A stretch of 64,000 nt of DNA from Piromyces finnis finn. Its lineage: Eukaryota; Fungi; Neocallimastigomycota. This document shows positions 13,616 through 24,649 of the stretch, piece by piece (the stretch's first letter is position 1; each line of letters opens with the position of its first letter). The notes under the pieces were generated by a model, which ran no database searches, was not told where the DNA came from, and saw only the letters and a list, made by a program, of their open reading frames with translations. The translations under genes were made by a program, and so were the position numbers. Location of the stretch: positions 248,001 to 312,000 of the forward strand of contig MCFH01000035.1 in assembly GCA_002104945.1 (NCBI GenBank), in the 5' to 3' direction.

Positions 13616-16600
13616 TTAAATAGATTTTAAGGATGAAAAGAATTCTTTATTTCCATTGTTTATTGAAAATATATTATTTTCATTCATATATTCATCAAAT
13701 ATATTTGGATTGTATTTCATTAAAACTTTAATTAAATTATAATTATGATGATCAAATGAAACAGTAAGAGCTGAATCCTTACAACGATCCTGTATATTGA
13801 CGTTAGCTTCATGTTCTAACAGATAGCTTACAATATCAATATTTCCTTGTTCACATGCATAAATTAAGGGTGTATCATTAAATTTATTTTGATGATTTAC
13901 TTTTGCACCATGTTCGATGAAGTATTTAATTTTAAGTATATGTCCTTCTTCACAGGCTTTCATTAATGGAGTACTACCATATTCATTCTGAATATTAATT
14001 TCCGCGCCTTGATTAATTAAATCAACCAATAAGTTATAATAAATTGGTAAATCTTTAAAAATGTTCTTATTATTCATTTGTATCATAAATTGGTTTTTAT
14101 CCGCACCATGCTCTATAAGATAGTTAACAATAGAATATTGATTATTTTCATAGGCAATTATTAATGCTGAATGGCCGGATGAATTAATTTGATTGACATT
14201 GACTTTATGGTCTATTAAATATTTTACAATAGACATAAAACCAAATTTACAGGCCTTCATTAAAGCAGAATATTGACTTTTTGTCGAACTATTAACGTCA
14301 ACCCCATGATGGACCAAAAATTGAACAGTCTCAATATCACCTTTTTCACATGCCATTAGAAGTACCGACCTTCCATAGACATCCTTCTTATTGAGATCCA
14401 TTTGATCACAATAATCAAAACATTGGGTAATAAGACTAAAATACCCTTTTTTATAGGCATTAATAATGAATTGATCGTCTATACTTGAAACTAGTTCTTT
14501 TAAACTATAATTTTCAGGATCTTTGATCCATTTCTTTATATTCATCGTCTCTTTTGTAATATGAATTAATAGGATAATTCCATAGGTTTCCGATACAGTA
14601 ATGTCTTTGGCATATCTTATAATAAATTTACATAAATTGATATTAATAGAGGTCAATGGTATAATAAATACTTGTAATCCTTCATCAATTTCTTCCTCCT
14701 CCTCCTCCTCCTCTTCTTCTTCAATGTTTTCTTCTTCTTCTTCTTCTTCCATTGTCCTAATTAAATAATGAACAATGTCGTAATGAGCGTTTTTATAAGC
14801 ATAAATTACAGCTGAATCATCTTTAACATCACAAAAATCAATAAAAGCATTATTTTCTATTAAATATTTTACAATCCTTAAATTTCCTTGCTGACATGCT
14901 AGCATTAAGGAAGATTGACCTAAATCATTGGTAGTATTAATGTTTGCTTTTTTTTGAATTAAATATTGAACTCGAGATAATTGTCCACTTTTACATGCGT
15001 ACATAAGTGCTGTGAATCCATGTTTATCTTTTTGATTAATATCTAGCCCATGATCAATAACAATTTTAGCTATTTCAAAATCCTTTGTATATTGAGATGC
15101 AAATAAGCTTTGATAATTTGAATTCTTTAGGTTTGAAATGTCGATACCACATTCAATAAAATATTTTAAACCTTCTAAATGACGACTATTGAAAGATTGT
15201 ATTATGGCTTTGGTCCTATTGAAATTTCCAATATTGTTACCTTCCACTAAACGTTTTATCAATTTAAGATTGTTATTTTCACAAGCATATAATAATGCAG
15301 TATACTTATAATTATTGATTACTTCTGTTATGGCACCTTCATGAATTAAATAATTTGCAATTTCATAATTATTTTTTTGACATGAAATAATTAAAGCGGT
15401 ATTATCGTTTCCATCAACTGCATTAATATGAGCACCTCTTTCAACCAAATATTTTACAATTTCCAGACTATTGATATTACATGCAAACATTAATAAAGTT
15501 TTTCCAAAATGATTTGAGGAATTAAGATTAGCACCGTTTTCATTTAAATATCTAATAATTTCAAAAATATCATTTAACATTTTAGTATCTACACAATAAT
15601 TATTATTCTCTTCAAATGTGAAGCTAAGTAAATGATGTGCCGCATTACTATTAATATCGGTTCTGTTGACATCCGCATGATGTTCAACTAAATATTTCAC
15701 CATATTAACATTAATATTTTCACAAGCAAACATTAATGCTGTTTGTTTTGAACTATTGGTAACGTTGATGTTGGCACCATGTTCAACCAAATATTCTACC
15801 ATAGGTAAATCATTATTTTTACTAGCTATTAATAAACCTTCAACAATATAATTTGTATAATTTTTAACAATTAAATTATTTTGTATCAAGTATTGCATAG
15901 TTTCCGTATGATTATTTTCAAAAGCTAGGGTTAATGCGGATTTTTGAAAAACATCATAGGTATTAAGATTAGCTCCATGTTCAATCAAATATTTAGATAG
16001 CTTAAAATAATTATTTTTTAATGCTTTCATCAGGCCCGTTCTTCGCTTAATGTCACATTGATTTACATCAGCACCATGCTCTATTAAATATTTAACAATA
16101 TTATATTGGTTATGTTCACAAGCCATTATTAAAGCAGTCATTCCATCCTTTGCCCGATGATGAATATTTGCACCATGTTTAATTAAAAGTTCTATAACTT
16201 CAATATTATTATTTTTACATGCCAAAGTTAATGCCTGATATCCAAAATCATTTGAGTGGGTAACTTCTGAACCATGTTCAATTAAATAATGAACGATATC
16301 GTAATTTCCATTTTCACTAGCATACATTAATCCAGTATTTTTAACATTATCCATGGCATTGACATCAGAATGATATTGAATTAAATGCTTTACTATATTA
16401 AAGTTATTACTTTGACATCCTTTAATTAGTTCAGATTCACCATACTTTCCTTTCCTATTCATGATACTATTATTTTTTAATAATAATTCAACAATGGAAT
16501 CATTTCCACCTTCACAAGCACATAATAATGCCGTTAATCCGTATTTACTAATACTATTCATATCAGCATGATGGTCAATCAAATATTTTACAATTTTATA

Positions 16601-19600
16601 ATTACCATTTTTGCATGCGTACATTAATGCTGTTCTTTTTTTGATATCTTTTGAATTAACATTAGCCCCCATATCTATCAAAAATGAAGCTATTTCGTAA
16701 CAGCCTTGCTCACATGCCATCATTAATAGAGTCTTTTTAGAATAATCATGAATTGTTTCAATATCACCGCCACTATTTACTAGGCGTTTGAATAGCATTA
16801 CATTATTATTTTCGCATGCTTTTGTTAATGCTGTTATACCATACCTATTAAACATGTTAATATTTGCATTATTTTTAATTAAATAATCAACAATTTCTAT
16901 AGAATTATTTTCACAAGCAATAATTAAAGCTGTGTTGCTACTCTCATTATTCTTATTAACATCAGCACCATGATCAATTAAATACTTTACAATTTCAATT
17001 TGATTATTACTACAACATTTCATTAATAGAGTATTTTGGGTACGATCACAATGAATATTAACATTGGCACCATTATCAATTAATCGTCTTATTATTGCCA
17101 TATTATTATTTTTACAAGCTATATAAAGCGCACTATGGCGTTTATAATCATTAGTATTATAAATATTTACATTTCCACCATGATTTAATAAATAATTTAT
17201 CATTTCAATATTATTATTTTCACATGCCATGATTAATGCGGTATCTCCAATTTTATTTTGATAGTTAATATTCATTCCCATTTCAATCAAGTATTTCATT
17301 AATTCCATTTGATTGTTTTTACACGCCATAATTAGTGCATTATTATTTTGTATATGGTGGGCCCAAATATCTGGTTGCATTTCCATTAAATATTTTGTTA
17401 TCCTTATATTATTTTCTTGACATGCTATAAGAAGAGCCGAATTTTTTTTGAAAGTATTATATTTATTGATATTTGCGCCATGTTCTACTAAATATTTAAC
17501 CATTAGTAAATTATTATTTTGACATGCATAGAAAAGAGGTGTGAATCCTTCTTTATCTTCTTGATTTACATCAATTTTTTGTTCTACTAAATAATTAACA
17601 ATACTCATATTATTTGATTTGCATGCATAAATTAAATTGGTAGTACCATCATTTGTCACTGAATTTATATCTGCTCCATGCTCCACTAAATATTTTACTA
17701 CATCTATATCATTAGTTTGGCATGCCAATAAAAGGGCTGTGTATCCAGAACTACTACAACAATTAATATCAGCGCCATGATCCACTAAATATTTTACTAT
17801 TTTAATATTACTACTGCTTTTACATATGTACATCAATGCAGTAAAACCATGCTTATTCAATTTATTAATTTCTACATCATGCTCTACTAAATAAGAAATA
17901 ATATCAAAATTATTATTTTTACAAGCTAATATTAATTCAGTATCTTCAAAAGCGTTTTCATTATTTAAATTAGCATGATGATCAATTAAATATTTTGTAA
18001 CTTCAGTATCATTATTTTCGATAGCAAACATCAAGGCTGTATAATTTAAATTGTTTGATTTATTAATATCTGCGCCGTGATGGACAAGGTATTTTACAAT
18101 TTCAATATTTTTTTTGATACAAGCTTTCATTAGTGGAGTTGAGCCATGATCATCCACCTCATTGACATTATACCCATTTTTTACTAAAATATCCACTGAT
18201 TCAATATCATTTAATAAGCACTTATTTATTAACACGTTATTTCCTAGAGTGTACTCATTATGGACATTGAATTGTCTTTTTTTTTCAAAAAGATAAACTA
18301 TATCCCAATGACCATGGTCAAATGCCACCATTTGTGGTTGATTACTATAACTATTATACAATTCAATTTTAATATTTTTTTCTAACAGATATTGAACAAT
18401 ATCATAGTACCCCTTCTCACATGCAAATACAATTGGTGTTACACCATAATGATCTGCTTTATTAATATCTGCGCCATGATCTACCAAATATTTTACTAAT
18501 TCTAAGTCTGGAAAAGCTTTCATTAATGCAGTACCTTGGTAATACGAATGTTCATTTAAATCAGCATCATGTTCAACAAGATATTTAATCATTTTAAGAT
18601 CTTTTCTTTCACATGAAATCATTAATAAGGTATCTTCGTAATCTGGTTTTACGTTAGGATCTGCATTCTTCTCCATTAAATAATTTACTAAATCGTCGTT
18701 ATCATATTTATAGGCTAAATAAAGTAACGACTGATTATTAAAACCGAGTACATTAACTGTTCCAAATTTCTTAATAATAAATTTTATCATATCCATATCT
18801 CTTGAAACTACAAACTCTTCAATTGGAACACAAAAATCCTTTGGATTAACATAGGTACTATAATCTATAATAGTTTTACAAACGGATGGATATTTAATGT
18901 TTCTGCCAATTTCTTTATATATATTAATACCATATTCAATTAAATACTTATAAAATGTATGATCTTTTTTTTTAACATATTGTAAATTTAGATAGTAATC
19001 ATTGTATGAACTAACACCATGATTTAATAAAAATTTAATGGTATTGAGATCGGTAGAATTTCCATAATAATAATATTTATTTATTATATATGAAATACCA
19101 GATTCTCCATCAAAATTATTTTTTATAGATGTGTCAGCACCATGTAGAGTTAGATATTCAATAGATTTTGAATTTCCATTTCCACATTCATCTACAAAAA
19201 TAGTTTTTGAGTAATGATCGCTGGTATCATATTTATCGAGGTCTAAACCTTGTTCCATCATAAAGTCAGCTATTTCATAATCATTATTATAAAAGCATGA
19301 ACTTAACATATCTATATAATAAAAATGTCTATTGAATATATTAGGGTCGGCTTTAAAATTCCGCAAGGACTTCAAAACCTCGATAGAGCTGGTTTTCTTT
19401 ACATTTTTTGAAAAACTATTATAAAATATTTTGACACCCTTTTTTATATAATTATTTATATCCGTATCATGAGTTTTTTCCTTTACCATATCATAAAGAT
19501 AGTTAAATGGTATTTTTACGACACCAATTTCTGTATATTCCTTATGTATTTTATTTAATTGGGTATCGGACCATGCTATTTTATTTTTTGAATTTTGAAC

Positions 19601-20275
19601 TAATATCAAGGCATATTTTTCAATATTTTTATTATATTCCTTTATAGCTATGTTTAAATATTTATCAAAATTAGTTTTATTCTTTGATTTATTGCTTTCT
19701 GTAATTTCTTCTATTTCTCCTGTTTCTGTTTCTTCACTATCTAGTAAATTACCAGAAGCAGCATACAATCTTTCTAGAAAATAATTTATATTAACTTTTC
19801 TGTGATATAAAAATTTAAATATATAATCATTTAATAAATTATTATTATAAAGATATATCAATAAATTTTCTCCATATTTATTACAGAAATTAATATCAGC
19901 ACCATGTTCCTCCAATAAATTAAATATTTTTACGTATTGTTTTATTAAAAAAAAGGAAGTTGAGTTTTTCGGAATTGCTTTCTCAAAAGCGACAAATAAT
20001 GGCACCTCATTTTCTTTCGTTTCATAATTCAAACTTGTTTTATACTTTTTACAATTCTTTATTATATATTCAATAATATCGATTGAACCGTTATTATTTA
20101 TTGCATATACTAATAAATCAAAATCTTTGTTATTTATATCGTCAATTTTAAATATATCTTTATTTACTTCTAAAAATAATTGAAAATTGTTTAATACATT
20201 CTCTTCTTTTGAATTTAATATTTTTTTAATTTCAATTGTCTTGTCGTAATTATCATTATTATTATATAAATTCAT
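13616..20275 (-). CDS. Giant intronless ankyrin-repeat protein (2219 aa)
   Basis: One uninterrupted ORF with recurring G.TPL..AC..NN..IVKYLVEHGADIN units at ~33-aa spacing, roughly 45-50 repeats estimated from length. It has a degenerate N-terminal region and a poly-Glu interruption near 14690-14750. Confidence 0.95.
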   Translation of the reverse strand: MNLYNNNDNYDKTIEIKKILNSKEENVLNNFQLFLEVNKDIFKIDDINNKDFDLLVYAINNNGSIDIIEYIIKNCKKYKTSLNYETKENEVPLFVAFEKAIPKNSTSFFLIKQYVKIFNLLEEHGADINFCNKYGENLLIYLYNNNLLNDYIFKFLYHRKVNINYFLERLYAASGNLLDSEETETGEIEEITESNKSKNKTNFDKYLNIAIKEYNKNIEKYALILVQNSKNKIAWSDTQLNKIHKEYTEIGVVKIPFNYLYDMVKEKTHDTDINNYIKKGVKIFYNSFSKNVKKTSSIEVLKSLRNFKADPNIFNRHFYYIDMLSSCFYNNDYEIADFMMEQGLDLDKYDTSDHYSKTIFVDECGNGNSKSIEYLTLHGADTSIKNNFDGESGISYIINKYYYYGNSTDLNTIKFLLNHGVSSYNDYYLNLQYVKKKDHTFYKYLIEYGINIYKEIGRNIKYPSVCKTIIDYSTYVNPKDFCVPIEEFVVSRDMDMIKFIIKKFGTVNVLGFNNQSLLYLAYKYDNDDLVNYLMEKNADPNVKPDYEDTLLMISCERKDLKMIKYLVEHDADLNEHSYYQGTALMKAFPDLELVKYLVDHGADINKADHYGVTPIVFACEKGYYDIVQYLLEKNIKIELYNSYSNQPQMVAFDHGHWDIVYLFEKKRQFNVHNEYTLGNNVLINKCLLNDIESVDILVKNGYNVNEVDDHGSTPLMKACIKKNIEIVKYLVHHGADINKSNNLNYTALMFAIENNDTEVTKYLIDHHANLNNENAFEDTELILACKNNNFDIISYLVEHDVEINKLNKHGFTALMYICKSSSNIKIVKYLVDHGADINCCSSSGYTALLLACQTNDIDVVKYLVEHGADINSVTNDGTTNLIYACKSNNMSIVNYLVEQKIDVNQEDKEGFTPLFYACQNNNLLMVKYLVEHGANINKYNTFKKNSALLIACQENNIRITKYLMEMQPDIWAHHIQNNNALIMACKNNQMELMKYLIEMGMNINYQNKIGDTALIMACENNNIEMINYLLNHGGNVNIYNTNDYKRHSALYIACKNNNMAIIRRLIDNGANVNIHCDRTQNTLLMKCCSNNQIEIVKYLIDHGADVNKNNESSNTALIIACENNSIEIVDYLIKNNANINMFNRYGITALTKACENNNVMLFKRLVNSGGDIETIHDYSKKTLLMMACEQGCYEIASFLIDMGANVNSKDIKKRTALMYACKNGNYKIVKYLIDHHADMNSISKYGLTALLCACEGGNDSIVELLLKNNSIMNRKGKYGESELIKGCQSNNFNIVKHLIQYHSDVNAMDNVKNTGLMYASENGNYDIVHYLIEHGSEVTHSNDFGYQALTLACKNNNIEVIELLIKHGANIHHRAKDGMTALIMACEHNQYNIVKYLIEHGADVNQCDIKRRTGLMKALKNNYFKLSKYLIEHGANLNTYDVFQKSALTLAFENNHTETMQYLIQNNLIVKNYTNYIVEGLLIASKNNDLPMVEYLVEHGANINVTNSSKQTALMFACENINVNMVKYLVEHHADVNRTDINSNAAHHLLSFTFEENNNYCVDTKMLNDIFEIIRYLNENGANLNSSNHFGKTLLMFACNINSLEIVKYLVERGAHINAVDGNDNTALIISCQKNNYEIANYLIHEGAITEVINNYKYTALLYACENNNLKLIKRLVEGNNIGNFNRTKAIIQSFNSRHLEGLKYFIECGIDISNLKNSNYQSLFASQYTKDFEIAKIVIDHGLDINQKDKHGFTALMYACKSGQLSRVQYLIQKKANINTTNDLGQSSLMLACQQGNLRIVKYLIENNAFIDFCDVKDDSAVIYAYKNAHYDIVHYLIRTMEEEEEEENIEEEEEEEEEEEIDEGLQVFIIPLTSININLCKFIIRYAKDITVSETYGIILLIHITKETMNIKKWIKDPENYSLKELVSSIDDQFIINAYKKGYFSLITQCFDYCDQMDLNKKDVYGRSVLLMACEKGDIETVQFLVHHGVDVNSSTKSQYSALMKACKFGFMSIVKYLIDHKVNVNQINSSGHSALIIAYENNQYSIVNYLIEHGADKNQFMIQMNNKNIFKDLPIYYNLLVDLINQGAEINIQNEYGSTPLMKACEEGHILKIKYFIEHGAKVNHQNKFNDTPLIYACEQGNIDIVSYLLEHEANVNIQDRCKDSALTVSFDHHNYNLIKVLMKYNPNIFDEYMNENNIFSINNGNKEFFSSLKSI

Positions 20276-21303: not shown

Positions 21304-24300
21304 TTAATTAAGTCCTGGAGTGGTCCAAACAGAAATTCTTTTGTCACTCTTACGAGTCATATTAGTAGATGGGTATTTTTCGCTCATTAATTTAGAAACA
21401 ACTTGTTGGTGTTCAATCTTCATTCTCTTACCAACACGATCATATCTAACTAATGGATCAATTGAATAACGTTCTTGACGTTGAATATTATCACAGGTAC
21501 AACCTAATAATTGCCAGTACATCTTTTCATGTTTGGTAAGAACAGATGGTCCATCAATACCATCATTACTTTCAGCATACCAGTTTTCTGGTTCACCCAT
21601 CATTTGTAATACCCAAGCTAAATCCATAGCGGATAAAGTAGAGTAAGCTAAACCATTTCCTTGTTCCCAGAATGGTTCAACTAAGGCATCACCTATCATG
21701 GCAACAAATAAGGCCTTCTTTGGTGTGTTATCCTTATTTTCTTTTAATAATTTTTCATTCTTTGCAATTTCAGCTTCACGACGAAGACGAGCGGCTTCTT
21801 CTTCATCAATAGCCTTTTGCTTTTCTTTCTTTTTATTAAGTTCAAGAGCTTCTTTTTCAAATTCTTCTGGAAGAACCTTTACATGGTTTCTTTCTTCTTC
21901 TTCCTTTAAGAGTCTTAATCTTTCCTTTTCAGCTTCCTTTGCCTTTCTTTGTTCTTCAAGGGCTTCCTTAATTAAAATTTCATCTTCTTCTCTACCCTTT
22001 CTAAGGACTTCTTCCTTTCTTTTCTTTTCTTCTTCTTCCTTTTTCTTTAATTCCTTTTGCTTTTCACTCCATGTTGGTCCTGTTTGAACTGGTGCTGGAG
22101 CTGGATTTTCCTTTTTCTTTTCTTCTTCTTTTTGTTGAGCAAAAGCTTTTTGTCTTTCACTCCATGTTGGTCCAGTGCTCTTTGGAATCTTAAGATCCTT
22201 TTCCTTTGGCTTATCAGCGTTTGCAGTAATAGATTCCCATTTATTGACATTAATTTTTGAAACCTTCTTTACTAGTTCAGGCTTCTTAACATTATTGTCA
22301 TCAGAAACTTGAGCAAAGAAACTCATTCTTTTAGAAACTAAACCTGATAAGTTTTTAGATGGGAAATCTTTTGGCTTGCTGGAGAAACTCTTTTGTTGCT
22401 GTTGTTGTTGTTGCTGTTCGAAAGCACGAAGAGAATTTCTTGAAAGTGGTCTTGGAATTGGACTAGAAGAACCACCTCTTCTTCTTAATTCATTCATTAA
22501 TCTAGCATCTTCATCCATTTTTTTCTTAGCAAGAGCAGCTTCTTCCATTCTTCTTTTAGCATCTTCTTCAGCTCTCTTCTTTCTTGCTTCTTCTTCGGCC
22601 TTTCTCTTAGCTTCTTCTTCAGCTTTTCTCTTAGCTTCTTCTTCGGCCTTCTTTTTAGCTTCTTCTTCGACCTTCTTTCTAGCTTCTTCTTCGGCTTTTC
22701 TTCTGGCTTCTTCTTCTGCCTTTCTTCTAGCTTCTTCTTCTGCCTTTCTTCTGGCTTCTTCTTCCTTACGCTTTCTTTCAATTTCTAATTCCATTTCTCT
22801 TCTGCGCTTCATTCTATCATTATATATTTCTTCCTTTTCAATTCTTTCTTTATTTGGAATTCTCTTTATAATTTTTTGTGGTGGTTCAACCTTTGGTGGA
22901 GTATATTCAAATGGCTAAAAAAAAAATTTATAAAATAATTATATATCATAAGTATTATTATAAATTAATTTAAATAGAATACATTTATAGTTATTCTTGT
23001 GTTGCCTTTTTTTAAAATGACTTTTTAAAGTAAAAATCGAAAATAAATAAATAAAAAAAATATTTCTTATATTACCTCAACTAAGAATTTACTTGGTTTA
23101 TTAGAACAATGACGTTCTGAAATATTATAAATTCCAATGAATGGTTTATTAGATTTATTTGAAATAGATAAAAGACAGGTAGCTGGGATTTTACATTTAT
23201 CAGCAACTCTTCTAAGATAGGTTGCTAAAATGTCGTAATTTACATTTTCTGGTTCTAATAATTCATCTAAATCATCTCTATCTTCATTTAAAACACCAGT
23301 TTCTAATAAGTTTTCCTTACTAGGAGTGGTTAAAATGAAATGTGTTTCATCAGCATTGTAAATAATATTTGAAAATTGAACAGCACAAACACCATGTTTA
23401 AATGGAGCATATTTAGCTTTACTTAAATTTGAAATACTGTTATCAGTATCAAAATTTGCAGTTATAGCAATATCATGAAGACCAGGAATAACTTGTCTTT
23501 CAAAGTTAAATTCCTTCATTATATTTGTATTATGACCTGAAGCATCAACTAATACATTAAATTCATAATTTTTAAGTTCTTCATGTTCAGTTTCAAAAGT
23601 AGCAGTATAATATGGTGATTTTTTGTTATCGAAACGATTAACATATTTATATTCGGAATTTGGATAAACTATTTAATAGTGAGATGAAAAGTTTTTTTAA
23701 AGAAAACAGAAAATGAAAAGGATTATTTGAGTTATTTATAATATTTTATATAAAATTTTATAACAAAATATGGCAATATTAAAATAAAATATTATATATT
23801 AATAGTTAATTATAAATTTGTGTTTCTAAAATAATTACCTCTTACACCAAGAATAAGTGCAATTTTTAATAAGCAAAGTTGAAGTCTCTTTGTAGAGATT
23901 AAATCGTGTCCATGAACACCAAATTCTTTATAGAGATCTCGAACACCCAAATCACGAAGATCGATAAGATCGAAATCCCAAGCTTCTAAAATTTCAGTTC
24001 TATCAAAGAAATTCTTCTTTTCAGCAACAACGATATTATTGAATTTTAAAAAGGCAGCTTCAATAGCCATTCTAAGACCGGCTGGACCTGCCCCGATAAT
24101 AAGAATGTTTCTTTCTTGTGGATATATTTTTTTATTATCTTCACGATATTCTTCTCTTTTTCTTAAGAATTCTTCGTAAACTTTTGCACTTTTTTGGTAT
24201 TCTTGGGCTTCAAAATGATTATCTAAACCTTTCCATAGTGGACGTAAGTGTGGAATAGTACGGATACTTGCCTTTTTTAAATTGTTATAAACAATTTGTG

Positions 24301-24649
24301 GTTCTTTTGTTTTAACGCTGAAAGTATCATTTTTGACTATTTCTTCAATTTCAAGGAATTCTGGTAAATTTCTCCAAGATTCATCTTCTGGAACAGATAA
24401 ATCAATTGGTGTTGTATCTCTCTTTGGTTGTGGTTTTGATATTGGTTGAATGTTTCTATTGAAAATATTTGCTATTTCATTAGTATTACCACCACCTTCC
24501 TTCATTTTTTCTAATTTATCTACACAAGATTGTTTGTATTCTTGGAAAGCCTCTAAGGTTTCTTCTAAATCATCAGCTTCAACAAATTTTATTAAATTTT
24601 CTTTGACATTTGAAGTGTCAGTCTTTAAAGCAGTAATTCCACCCAACAT
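21304..24649 (-). CDS. MICAL-like FAD-dependent monooxygenase with a large internal charged insertion, 3 exons, ~1004 aa
   Basis: complement(join(21304..22914,23076..23668,23839..24649)); both introns GT-AG and phase-consistent. MICAL MO-domain motifs in order: FVEADDLEETLEAFQE, LWKGLD, ILIIGAGPAGLRMAIEAAFL, ISTKRLQLCLLKIALILGV, YEFNVLVDASG, AITANF, FSNIIY..DETHFILTTPSKENLLETGVL, MIGDALVEPFWEQGNG, SAMDLAW, YSIDPLVRY. No CH or LIM domain follows. Confidence 0.88.
22560..22775 (-). repeat. 24-bp coding repeat encoding (EEEARRKA)n single-alpha-helix type sequence
   Basis: Translation KEEEARRKAEEEARRKAEEEARRKAEEEARKKVEEEAKKKAEEEAKRKAEEEAKRKAEEEARKK inside exon 3 of the monooxygenase gene. Confidence 0.9.

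What the first reader, a model, noticed from the sequence alone, without database searches (positions are those of the whole stretch)
21304..24649. MICAL-type actin-oxidising monooxygenase domain in a probable obligate anaerobic fungus
Seen: after splicing, every block of the MICAL MO domain is present in order, including the N-terminal helical bundle, GxGxxG (GAGPAG), the IS.R.LQL.LLK.AL.LGV helix, GD.LVEPFW with the flavin-stacking Trp, and the terminal Y..DP..RY. Known: animal MICALs use FAD, NADPH and O2 to oxidise actin Met44/Met47 and sever F-actin, and carry CH and LIM domains. I know of no characterised fungal MICAL. Inference: a stand-alone MICAL without CH/LIM in an anaerobe could act as an oxygen-triggered cytoskeletal switch (for example on air exposure between hosts), as an O2-consuming NADPH oxidase, or use another acceptor.
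Basis: partly seen in the sequence, partly recalled or inferred. Interest (0 to 1): 0.82.

Follow-up and report, generated by a model that had tools for sequence, protein, structure and literature searches.

The report
Divergent MICAL-type flavoenzyme in anaerobic fungus
An anaerobic gut fungus has a real, apparently transcribed relative of the animal actin-oxidising enzyme MICAL, but it lacks the animal targeting domains, carries a 400-residue charged rod inside the enzyme fold, and has replaced flavin-pocket residues that are almost invariant in the rest of the family, so it may not do the classical oxygen-dependent reaction.

Summary
A three-exon gene on the minus strand (24649..21304) encodes a 1004-aa protein. 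All of its pieces match the MICAL1/MICAL3 monooxygenase (MO) domain, in order, and no other solved flavoenzyme. Intron-free contigs from relatives skip both introns exactly. Orthologs occur in Anaeromyces robustus and Neocallimastix californiae. The protein has no CH, LIM or bMERB domain.

Three points change the reading.

1. MICAL-type MO domains are not limited to animals. They occur in many chytrids, Monoblepharomycota, Amoebozoa and oomycetes, and many are already auto-named "[F-actin]-monooxygenase". The anaerobic-fungus clade is sister to the Chytridiomycota sequences, so inheritance looks vertical.

2. The clade sits on a very long stem branch. It has replaced residues that are invariant or nearly so in 154 other family members: R116K, N123E (the flavin N5 hydrogen-bond partner), E282S, Y293F/Y, D360X, FDF364-366YNI, P401E and G403 variable. 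The FAD dinucleotide motifs and the stacking Trp are kept.

3. A roughly 400-aa insert before the GD motif (an ER/K helix, a conserved basic island, and more helices) is under purifying selection, as is the rest of the protein.

Canonical O2-driven actin oxidation is therefore unproven, and this evidence weakens it. I class it as a new variant of a known kind, of moderate interest.

The parts
23839..24649 (-). Exon 1 (aa 1-270 plus 1 base). Holds the N-terminal helices, an acidic or disordered extension (aa ~55-107), the GxGxxG strand and the helix ending ..ALILGVR.
   Evidence: ORF and splice model. PDB phmmer hit to MICAL3 at E 5e-19. Junction confirmed by L002 and L003.
23669..23838 (-). 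Intron 1, 170 nt, GT..AG, phase 1.
   Evidence: Contains stops and has GC of about 0.18-0.25. Skipped in L003 and L002. Present and longer in genomic L001.
23076..23668 (-). Exon 2 (aa 271-468), the substrate-side half of the MO domain, with ITANF and the Rossman_Mical region.
   Evidence: Pfam PF25413 at E 9e-15. PDB hit to MICAL3 at E 8e-12.
22915..23075 (-). Intron 2, 161 nt, GT..AG, phase 0.
   Evidence: Absent from genomic L001 and from L002 and L003, which read ..FLVE|PFEY.. without a break.
21304..22914 (-). Exon 3 (aa 469-1004 plus the stop). Holds most of the insertion, then the GD-motif strand, the stacking Trp and the C-terminal helices.
24077..24094 (-). GxGxxG dinucleotide-binding motif, GAGPAG (aa 186-191, equivalent to MICAL1 G91-G96).
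   Evidence: Invariant in all 10 anaerobic-fungus sequences.
23993..23995 (-). Codon for E219, at the position of MICAL1 Asn123, the flavin N5 hydrogen-bond partner.
   Evidence: This position is N in 153 of 154 other family members and E in 10 of 10 anaerobic-fungus sequences. The role of N123 is taken from PMC3645671.
21724..23084 (-). Lineage-specific insertion (aa ~466-865, interrupted by intron 2). It replaces a roughly 10-residue hairpin loop between MICAL1 residues ~375 and ~386, just before the GD-motif strand.
   Evidence: Alignment to chytrid and other MO domains. dN/dS is 0.15. It is present in the intron-free (transcript-like) contigs.
22483..22833 (-). ER/K-type charged helix (aa 496-612). 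It includes a 24-nt tandem array at 22551..22764 that encodes AEEEA[RK][RK]K units.
   Evidence: 70% of residues are E, D, K or R, and 11% are hydrophobic. TRF finds 8.8 copies. AlphaFold2 models one continuous helix, 488-607 in ortholog P0019.
22228..22386 (-). Conserved island in the otherwise disordered, basic middle of the insertion (aa ~645-697: SSKPKDFPSKNLSGLVSKRMSFFAQVSDD..KVSKINV.KWE).
   Evidence: Nearly invariant in 10 orthologs. Low pLDDT. No Pfam or Atlas match.
21724..22047 (-). Distal charged helices of the insertion (aa 758-865), which lead back into the MO fold.
   Evidence: AlphaFold2 helices 746-803 and 811-853 in P0019. 52% of positions are invariant among the orthologs.
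21667..21693 (-). GD motif and flavin-stacking Trp: GDALVEPFW (aa 876-884, equivalent to MICAL1 G392-W400). It is followed by EQGNG, where other members have P.G[TS]G.
21442..21468 (-). C-terminal MICAL signature Y..DP..RY (YSIDPLVRY, aa 951-959).

Best explanation
This is a vertically inherited gene of a Neocallimastigomycete for a MICAL-type FAD-binding monooxygenase-fold protein. It appears to be transcribed and is under purifying selection. It has no CH, LIM or bMERB domain. A roughly 400-aa insertion sprouts from a hairpin just before the GD motif: a long ER/K single helix going out, a basic disordered middle with a conserved ~50-aa island, and charged helices coming back. The ADP-binding half of the FAD site is intact (GxGxxG, the Glu that binds the ribose, R121, the GD motif, the stacking Trp), so it most likely still binds FAD and takes electrons from NAD(P)H (inferred). 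The isoalloxazine pocket was rebuilt on the stem of the anaerobic lineage: R116K, N123E with loss of its partner D360, E282S, Y293F/Y, FDF to YNI, P401E, and G403 variable. The MO core also turned acidic. I therefore read it as a flavoprotein whose oxygen chemistry was changed or weakened when the lineage became anaerobic. It is kept for a selected role, probably still on the cytoskeleton, and the inserted rod and its conserved basic island may take over the targeting or regulation that CH, LIM and bMERB provide in animals. Homology, gene model, transcript-like contigs, selection, phylogeny and the residue replacements are shown. Cofactor binding, substrate and oxygen dependence are inferred.
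For: Membership of the fold and family. Each exon piece hits only MICAL1/3 in the PDB. The fungal profile hits MICAL3 at 1e-100 and MICAL1 at 5e-90, and the next non-MICAL chain scores 0.015. Pfam PF25413 matches. An AlphaFold2 model of the 91%-identical ortholog has a core pLDDT of 80-97. Its ten best Foldseek matches are all MICAL MO structures (E 3e-25, 472 columns against 479-residue 2bry_A), and other class A monooxygenases start at 1e-9.

Transcription and gene model. Intron-free contigs L002 and L003 have AT-rich flanks resembling untranslated regions. Four runs hold 0.89-0.90 of the locus words, which equals the exonic fraction of 0.901; this is indirect.

Selection. dN/dS is 0.09 (MO N part), 0.15 (insert) and 0.13 (MO C part) at dS of about 0.8.

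Vertical descent. The clade has 100/100 support, is sister to the Chytridiomycota sequences (100/86), and lies within a zoosporic-fungal group (100/96). All CH/LIM proteins lie across a 99/96 split.

Remodelled pocket. The positions are invariant or nearly so in 154 other sequences and are replaced in 10 of 10 anaerobic-fungus sequences. Residue roles come from PMC3645671. The stem branch is 1.23 changes per site. The MO core net charge is -6 to -17, against a median of +4 in 148 others.

No eraser. Neocallimastigomycetes lack MsrA and MsrB (bioRxiv 10.1101/2021.02.26.433065).
Against: No biochemical data exist for any non-animal MICAL-type protein. W400, N243, T291, R121 and the GD motif are kept, which also fits a still-working monooxygenase. 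The replacements are not significantly concentrated in the three literature-defined flavin-surrounding segments (12 of 29 against 13 of 53 conserved columns, p = 0.14). They become significant only when the 360-366 strand is added post hoc (p = 0.0065). Some changes (R to K, G to N, D to N, P to E) run in the direction of the genome's AT bias. A link to the cytoskeleton rests on homology alone. The reads tool failed, so expression in this very strain is indirect.
Confidence: 0.45

Rival explanations
1. Canonical MICAL chemistry. The protein uses FAD, NADPH and O2 to oxidise actin Met44/Met47 and sever F-actin. Because the cell is normally anoxic, it acts as an oxygen-triggered cytoskeletal switch.
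For: The fold and all sequence blocks are MICAL-type. In animals the MO domain alone is fully active (PMC11315924). [quoted passage not shown] Strong purifying selection. W400, N243, T291, R121 and the GD motif are kept. With no autoinhibitory bMERB domain, oxygen supply could be the regulator.
Against: N123, D360, Y293, E282, F364-D365-F366, P401, G403 and R116 are invariant or nearly so in 154 other members, including aerobic chytrids, and are replaced here. Y293, D360, F399 and G403 even vary among the anaerobic fungi. The MO core is acidic rather than basic. MsrB, which reverses the mark, is absent from this phylum.
Confidence: 0.2
2. Pseudoenzyme. The MO fold survives as a structural or binding module, possibly still holding FAD as a structural cofactor, with no redox turnover. 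Function lies in the rod insertion and protein contacts.
For: Near-invariant pocket residues are lost, and several of these positions vary within the clade. The stem branch is very long. The insertion is conserved and carries an invariant island.
Against: The dinucleotide motifs, the stacking Trp and N243/T291 are invariant in all 10 sequences. The MO part has the lowest dN/dS (0.09) and the highest share of invariant positions (0.68) of any part, which fits a site still under cofactor-related constraint.
Confidence: 0.2
3. Oxygen scavenger. The protein is an uncoupled NAD(P)H oxidase that removes traces of O2 or makes H2O2 as a signal, with no protein substrate.
For: Animal MICAL MO domains have basal NADPH oxidase activity that produces H2O2 (PMC3645671, PMC10705957 abstract). 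An anaerobe benefits from removing O2.
Against: A 400-aa conserved rod with a binding-type island is hard to explain for a soluble scavenger. Making H2O2 is harmful to an anaerobe. The N5-side residues that normally tune oxygen reactivity are the ones changed.
Confidence: 0.1
4. Not a fungal gene: contamination or recent horizontal transfer from the animal host or a gut protist.
For: The literature describes MICAL as animal-specific (PMC3305314, PMC11853071, PMC10746283).
Against: The gene lies in a 64-kb fungal-type window with intergenic GC of 10-13% and short AT-rich GT-AG introns. Orthologs occur in at least two named genera of anaerobic fungi. The clade is sister to the Chytridiomycota sequences and is separated from all CH/LIM proteins by a 99/96 branch.
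Confidence: 0.01

Closest known systems
Animal MICAL1, MICAL2, MICAL3 and Drosophila Mical (MO-CH-LIM-bMERB F-actin monooxygenases; PDB 2BRY, 2C4C, 4TXI, 6ICI, 8Y6K, 9EWY)
   Same: The MO fold, including the N-terminal helices and the C-terminal Y..DP..RY segment. GxGxxG, the GD motif, the stacking Trp and ITANF. About 30% identity over the domain. These are the only significant PDB matches.
   Different: No CH, LIM or bMERB domain. A ~400-aa insertion before the GD motif. R116, N123, E282, Y293, D360, FDF364-366, P401 and G403 are replaced. The core is acidic. The host is an obligate anaerobe whose phylum lacks MsrB.
MICAL-type MO proteins of aerobic zoosporic fungi (Nowakowskiella, Phlyctochytrium, Borealophlyctis, Geranomyces, Powellomyces, Gaertneriomyces, Gonapodya, Hyaloraphidium). 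All are uncharacterised and some are auto-named '[F-actin]-monooxygenase mical1/2/3'.
   Same: They are the closest relatives in the tree (100/86 and 100/96). They also lack CH and LIM.
   Different: They keep the canonical flavin-pocket residues. They have only a short loop where the anaerobic fungi carry the 400-aa insertion. They sit on much shorter branches.
Amoebozoan and oomycete MICAL-type MO proteins (Balamuthia, Acanthamoeba ACA1_209420, Physarum, Arcella, Phytophthora), several fused to EF-hands
   Same: A MICAL-type MO domain without CH or LIM. They show that the domain predates animals.
   Different: Different accessory modules (EF-hands, or a transmembrane segment plus coiled coil). 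A canonical pocket. No ER/K insertion.
Class A flavoprotein monooxygenases (p-hydroxybenzoate hydroxylase type: aromatic hydroxylases, tetracycline destructases, halogenases)
   Same: The general two-domain FAD fold (Foldseek E of about 1e-9).
   Different: Sequence matches are limited to the GxGxxG strand (E 0.015 or worse). They lack the MICAL N-terminal helices and the C-terminal segment.
ER/K single alpha-helix (SAH) domains, as in myosin VI, myosin X and caldesmon (named from general knowledge)
   Same: A long run of E and K/R with i to i+4 opposite charges, few hydrophobic residues, and a model of one uninterrupted helix of about 120 residues.
   Different: Here it is inserted inside an enzyme fold and has to return to its starting point through further helices. 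Its SAH behaviour has not been measured.

Membership tests
MICAL-type monooxygenase domain (Pfam PF25413-bearing MO fold) | Sequence matches MICAL MO domains specifically, not other class A flavoenzymes | tested here: met
   PDB search with the profile gives MICAL3 at 1e-100, MICAL1 at 5e-90 and the next chain at 0.015. Single exon pieces score 5e-19, 8e-12 and 6e-11. PF25413 scores 9e-15, above its cut-off.
MICAL-type monooxygenase domain (Pfam PF25413-bearing MO fold) | Predicted fold superposes on solved MICAL MO over its whole length, including the N-terminal helices and the C-terminal segment | tested here: met
   Foldseek matches 2bry_A at E 3e-25 with TM(target) 0.68 and 472 aligned columns of 479 residues. 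The top 10 matches are all MICAL. The model is of ortholog P0019, which is 91% identical to the window protein.
MICAL-type monooxygenase domain (Pfam PF25413-bearing MO fold) | FAD dinucleotide motifs: GxGxxG, ribose-binding Glu (E114), R121, GD motif, stacking Trp400 | tested here: met
   All are present and invariant in 10 anaerobic-fungus sequences.
MICAL-type monooxygenase domain (Pfam PF25413-bearing MO fold) | Near-invariant isoalloxazine-pocket residues (R116, N123, E282, Y293, D360, F364-D365-F366, P401, G403) | tested here: not met
   Each position carries the family residue in at least 150 of the 151-154 other sequences that have a residue there. Here they are K, E, S, F/Y, F/S/N/C, Y-N-I, E and G/N/S. 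Roles of N123, D360 and Y293 come from PMC3645671.
MICAL protein family in the strict sense (MO-CH-LIM-bMERB) | Calponin-homology domain after the MO domain | tested here: not met
   No PF00307 hit in any exon piece or in ortholog P0019. No hit in an in-session jackhmmer search seeded with the MICAL1 CH region. The ORF ends 45 aa after the MO signature, and orthologous transcript-like contigs end at the same place.
MICAL protein family in the strict sense (MO-CH-LIM-bMERB) | LIM domain and C-terminal bMERB/DUF3585 Rab-binding domain | tested here: not met
   No PF00412 or PF12130 hit.
MICAL protein family in the strict sense (MO-CH-LIM-bMERB) | F-actin-stimulated NADPH consumption and stereospecific oxidation of actin Met44/Met47 | not testable with these tools
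   This needs purified protein and actin.
ER/K single alpha-helix domain | Dominant E and K/R content with i/i+4 opposite charges, no hydrophobic seam, and one long isolated helix | tested here: met
   For aa 496-612: 34% E+D, 36% K+R, 11% hydrophobic, and 31 plus 35 i/i+4 opposite-charge pairs in 117 residues. AlphaFold2 models a helix at 488-607 with pLDDT of about 75. Physical SAH behaviour was not measured.

The most novel reading that the evidence does not exclude
On becoming anaerobic, the gut fungi converted an ancestral MICAL-type monooxygenase into a flavoprotein that works without O2. It could be a reductase or dehydrogenase with another acceptor, or a redox-silent actin-binding module. 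A glutamate replaces the flavin N5 asparagine, and an inserted ~18-nm ER/K rod presents a conserved basic motif as a new targeting device. It would be the first MICAL-family member with oxygen-independent function, and a natural experiment on which residues make this fold react with oxygen.
Probability: 0.3. Interest if true: 0.75.

Novelty: new variant of a known kind. Interest (0 to 1): 0.55.

Why it matters
Reviews and primary papers state that MICAL enzymes are limited to animals and that fungi have no homologs (PMC3305314, PMC11853071, PMC10746283). The searches here show that the catalytic domain is much older. It is present in zoosporic fungi, Amoebozoa and oomycetes, and apparently absent from the fungi usually studied. 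Within that wider family, the anaerobic gut fungi are the one group in this sample that rewrote the otherwise near-invariant flavin pocket while keeping the gene under strong selection. They did so in a phylum that has also lost the methionine sulfoxide reductases that reverse MICAL's mark. That gives a concrete test case for two questions: which residues give this fold its oxygen reactivity, and what a 'monooxygenase' does in a cell that avoids oxygen. It also offers a natural example of an ER/K rod inserted inside an enzyme domain.

Tried and rejected
All later work used 21300 upward. Expression in this strain therefore rests on indirect evidence and on relatives' contigs.

2. Known domains in the insertion or the N-terminal extension. 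Pfam at E up to 10 gave nothing usable. The ESM Atlas feature search of the middle part gave nothing. A WH2-like reading of '...RMSFFAQV...LVKKV' was considered and has no support from any search.

3. Exact look-up of the window's own ORFs in the protein collection found nothing, so this strain's proteins are not in it.

4. Word search of earlier scan notes for MICAL found nothing.

5. Test for concentration of replacements in the three literature-defined flavin-surrounding segments was not significant (p = 0.14). It was significant only after adding strand 360-366 post hoc, so I do not claim enrichment. I claim only that specific near-invariant residues are changed.

6. Contamination or transfer from the animal host is rejected by the tree, the introns and the base composition.

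7. The idea that the insertion is an unspliced intron is rejected. The frame stays open, the insertion is present in the intron-free (transcript-like) contigs, and dN/dS is 0.15.
Full report
GENE MODEL AND OBSERVATION

The interval 21304..24649 holds three minus-strand open frames, separated by two short AT-rich stretches. Splicing at GTAATT...ATAG (23838..23669) and GTAATA...TTAG (23075..22915) gives a 3015-nt CDS and a 1004-aa protein with no internal stop.

Both junctions are confirmed independently:
- The Logan contig L002 (2935 nt, a 958-aa uninterrupted ORF, P0015) reads ..LGVRVY.. and ..IVEPYEY.. across them.
- The JGI contig L003 (88-90% nt identity, with AT-rich flanks resembling untranslated regions) aligns to the window in three blocks that end and start exactly at the predicted exon borders.
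- The genomic contig L001 from a relative keeps intron 1 but has no intron 2, and it reads straight through that junction.

Four public runs of one organism hold 0.89-0.90 of the sampled words of the locus. That equals the exonic fraction (3015/3346 = 0.901) and fits spliced mRNA, but this is indirect. Those places were not sent to any search tool afterwards.

ORGANISM

Orthologs of 81-91% identity include Anaeromyces robustus BCR32DRAFT_281367 (P0020) and a truncated Neocallimastix californiae model, ORY27525.1 (P0007). Intergenic GC is 10-13%.

FAMILY MEMBERSHIP

Each exon piece finds only MICAL1/MICAL3 MO domains in the PDB, in colinear order (E 5e-19, 8e-12, 6e-11). Pfam Rossman_Mical (PF25413) matches exon 2. 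A profile of fungal MO domains hits MICAL3 at 1e-100 and MICAL1 at 5e-90, and the best non-MICAL chain scores 0.015 on the GxGxxG strand only.

An AlphaFold2 model of P0019 (91% identical to the window protein) has a confident MO core. Its ten best Foldseek matches are all MICAL MO structures (E 3e-25, 472 aligned columns against 479-residue 2bry_A). Other class A monooxygenases follow at 1e-9.

No CH, LIM or bMERB domain is present. The ORF ends 45 residues after the MO signature, as in the orthologous transcript-like contigs.

DISTRIBUTION AND DESCENT

An exhaustive profile search found 2167 proteins at E up to 0.001, and 495 at E up to 1e-30. Named non-animal members include:
- Chytridiomycota: Nowakowskiella (two strains), Phlyctochytrium, Borealophlyctis, Geranomyces, Powellomyces, Gaertneriomyces, Thoreauomyces, Fimicolochytrium.
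- Monoblepharomycota: Gonapodya, Hyaloraphidium.
- Amoebozoa: Balamuthia, Acanthamoeba, Physarum, Arcella, Protostelium.
- Phytophthora species, and the green alga Cymbomonas.

Several carry automatic names such as '[F-actin]-monooxygenase mical1'. The UniRef name of the A. robustus protein also begins '[F-actin]-monooxygenase'. No Dikarya or Mucoromycota protein appeared in these lists. That is not proof of absence.

In a maximum-likelihood tree (92 rows, 402 columns, LG+C20+F+G4):
- The anaerobic fungi form a 100/100 clade.
- That clade is sister to the Chytridiomycota sequences (100/86).
- Both lie inside a group that also holds the Monoblepharomycota (100/96).
- Every CH/LIM-bearing protein lies across a 99/96 split.

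This grouping of the zoosporic fungal phyla argues for vertical inheritance and against transfer from the host.

The literature says otherwise about distribution. [quoted passage not shown]

WHAT IS SPECIAL ABOUT THE ANAEROBIC CLADE

1. Stem branch. It is 1.23 changes per site, against a median terminal branch of 0.48 and 0.04-0.14 within the clade.

2. Conserved columns. Of 82 alignment columns that are at least 90% conserved in about 150 non-fungal members, the window protein keeps 57. Among the 25 it changes are positions that are invariant or nearly so in 154 other sequences, including the aerobic chytrids:

| MICAL1 position | Other family members (with the residue / with any residue) | Anaerobic fungi |
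|---|---|---|
| R116 | 154/154 | K |
| N123 | 153/154 | E in 10/10 |
| E282 | 153/154 | S |
| Y293 | 153/154 | F or Y |
| D360 | 153/153 | F, S, N or C |
| F364-D365-F366 | 153/153, 151/153, 153/153 | Y-N-I |
| P401 | 150/151 | E |
| G403 | 151/151 | G, N or S |

According to the structural review PMC3645671:
- Asn123 hydrogen-bonds flavin N5 and is held in place by Asn243, Thr291 and Asp360.
- Tyr293 bonds flavin O4 and was proposed to trigger the out-to-in flavin switch.
- Segments 121-130, 278-300 and 390-405 surround the isoalloxazine ring.

The residues kept in all ten sequences are GxGxxG, E114, R121, N243, T291, the GD motif, W400 and G405. The ADP-binding half of the cofactor site is therefore intact, while the N5/C4a side, where oxygen chemistry happens, has been rebuilt.

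The replacements are not significantly enriched in the three literature segments (p = 0.14). They are enriched only if strand 360-366 is added post hoc (p = 0.0065). Some also follow the AT bias of the genome. I claim specific changed residues, not a statistical concentration.

3. Charge. The MO core has a net charge of -6 to -17, against a median of +4 (5th to 95th percentile -5 to +12) in 148 others. The canonical domain has a basic face (PMC3645671).

4. Reversal enzymes. Neocallimastigomycetes lack MsrA and MsrB (bioRxiv 10.1101/2021.02.26.433065). The reductase that reverses MICAL's actin mark in animals is therefore missing.

THE INSERTION

Aerobic relatives have a loop of about 10 residues between the strand ending near MICAL1 residue 375 and the strand leading into the GD motif. 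The anaerobic fungi have about 400 residues there (aa 466-865). It has four parts:
- A conserved entry segment (aa 469-495).
- An ER/K run (aa 496-612). It is 70% charged and 11% hydrophobic, and includes a 24-nt tandem array of 8.8 units encoding AEEEA[RK][RK]K. AlphaFold2 models it as one 120-residue helix.
- A basic (+14), low-confidence middle part (aa 613-757). It holds an almost invariant island at about aa 645-697 and two copies of a TGPTWSE[RK]QK motif.
- Two further charged helices that return to the fold.

dN/dS of the insertion is 0.15, against 0.09 and 0.13 for the two MO parts (dS of about 0.8). No known domain was found in it. The repeat number differs between orthologs. I confirm its presence and add its anatomy and its selective constraint.

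INTERPRETATION

Shown:
- Homology to the MICAL MO fold.
- The gene model, and intron-free (transcript-like) contigs in close relatives.
- Purifying selection.
- Vertical descent within the zoosporic fungi.
- Absence of CH, LIM and bMERB domains.
- The insertion.
- Lineage-specific replacement of otherwise near-invariant pocket residues.

Inferred:
- The protein still binds FAD and is reduced by NAD(P)H.
- Its oxygen-dependent chemistry was altered or weakened.
- Its role is still on the cytoskeleton.
- The rod and its island provide targeting or regulation.

In animals the MO domain alone is fully active (PMC11315924), and actin Met44 is conserved in fungi (PMC10746283). But it has to explain why residues that tolerate almost no change in 154 other sequences were replaced, and why some of them now vary within the clade. 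Pseudoenzyme and oxygen-scavenger readings are the other rivals. Only biochemistry can decide between them.

VERDICT

This is a genuine gene and a member of the MICAL-type MO domain family. It is not a MICAL protein in the strict multidomain sense. It is a new variant of a known kind. The mere existence of fungal homologs is already visible in databases, although the literature denies it. The new content is the remodelled flavin pocket, the acidic core and the in-fold ER/K rod in an obligate anaerobe.

Noticed in passing
window 13616..20275 (-): A single uninterrupted 2219-aa ORF made of ankyrin-like repeats, with an acidic E-rich stretch, lies directly downstream of the MICAL-type gene.
   Followed up: no
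window 22915..23075 versus L001:1814-1828: Intron 2 is present in the window but absent from the orthologous genomic contig of a related anaerobic fungus. Intron 1 is present in both and is longer there. This is an intron presence/absence difference between close relatives.
   Followed up: partly
window 22551..22764: The 24-nt tandem array encoding AEEEA[RK][RK]K varies in copy number among orthologs. For example, P0001 (656 aa) and P0013 (688 aa), from the same 90% cluster, differ by 32 residues, which is four units.
   Followed up: partly
P0136, P0149, P0309 (Balamuthia), P0316 (Acanthamoeba): Amoebozoan MICAL-type MO domains are fused to N-terminal EF-hands, which suggests calcium-regulated relatives of MICAL. 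P0073 instead has a transmembrane segment plus coiled coil in front of the MO domain.
   Followed up: partly
P0326, P0328, P0329, P0332 (Phytophthora spp.) and P0266 (Cymbomonas): MICAL-type MO domains also occur in oomycetes and in a green alga, so the domain may be older than Amorphea, or it may have moved between lineages.
   Followed up: no
P0140 (labelled Protostelium nocturnum) and P0208 (Gonapodya): A transcript labelled as an amoebozoan groups with a monoblepharid fungus at 100/98 support. This could be contamination, gene transfer or a deep-branch artefact.
   Followed up: no
   Followed up: no
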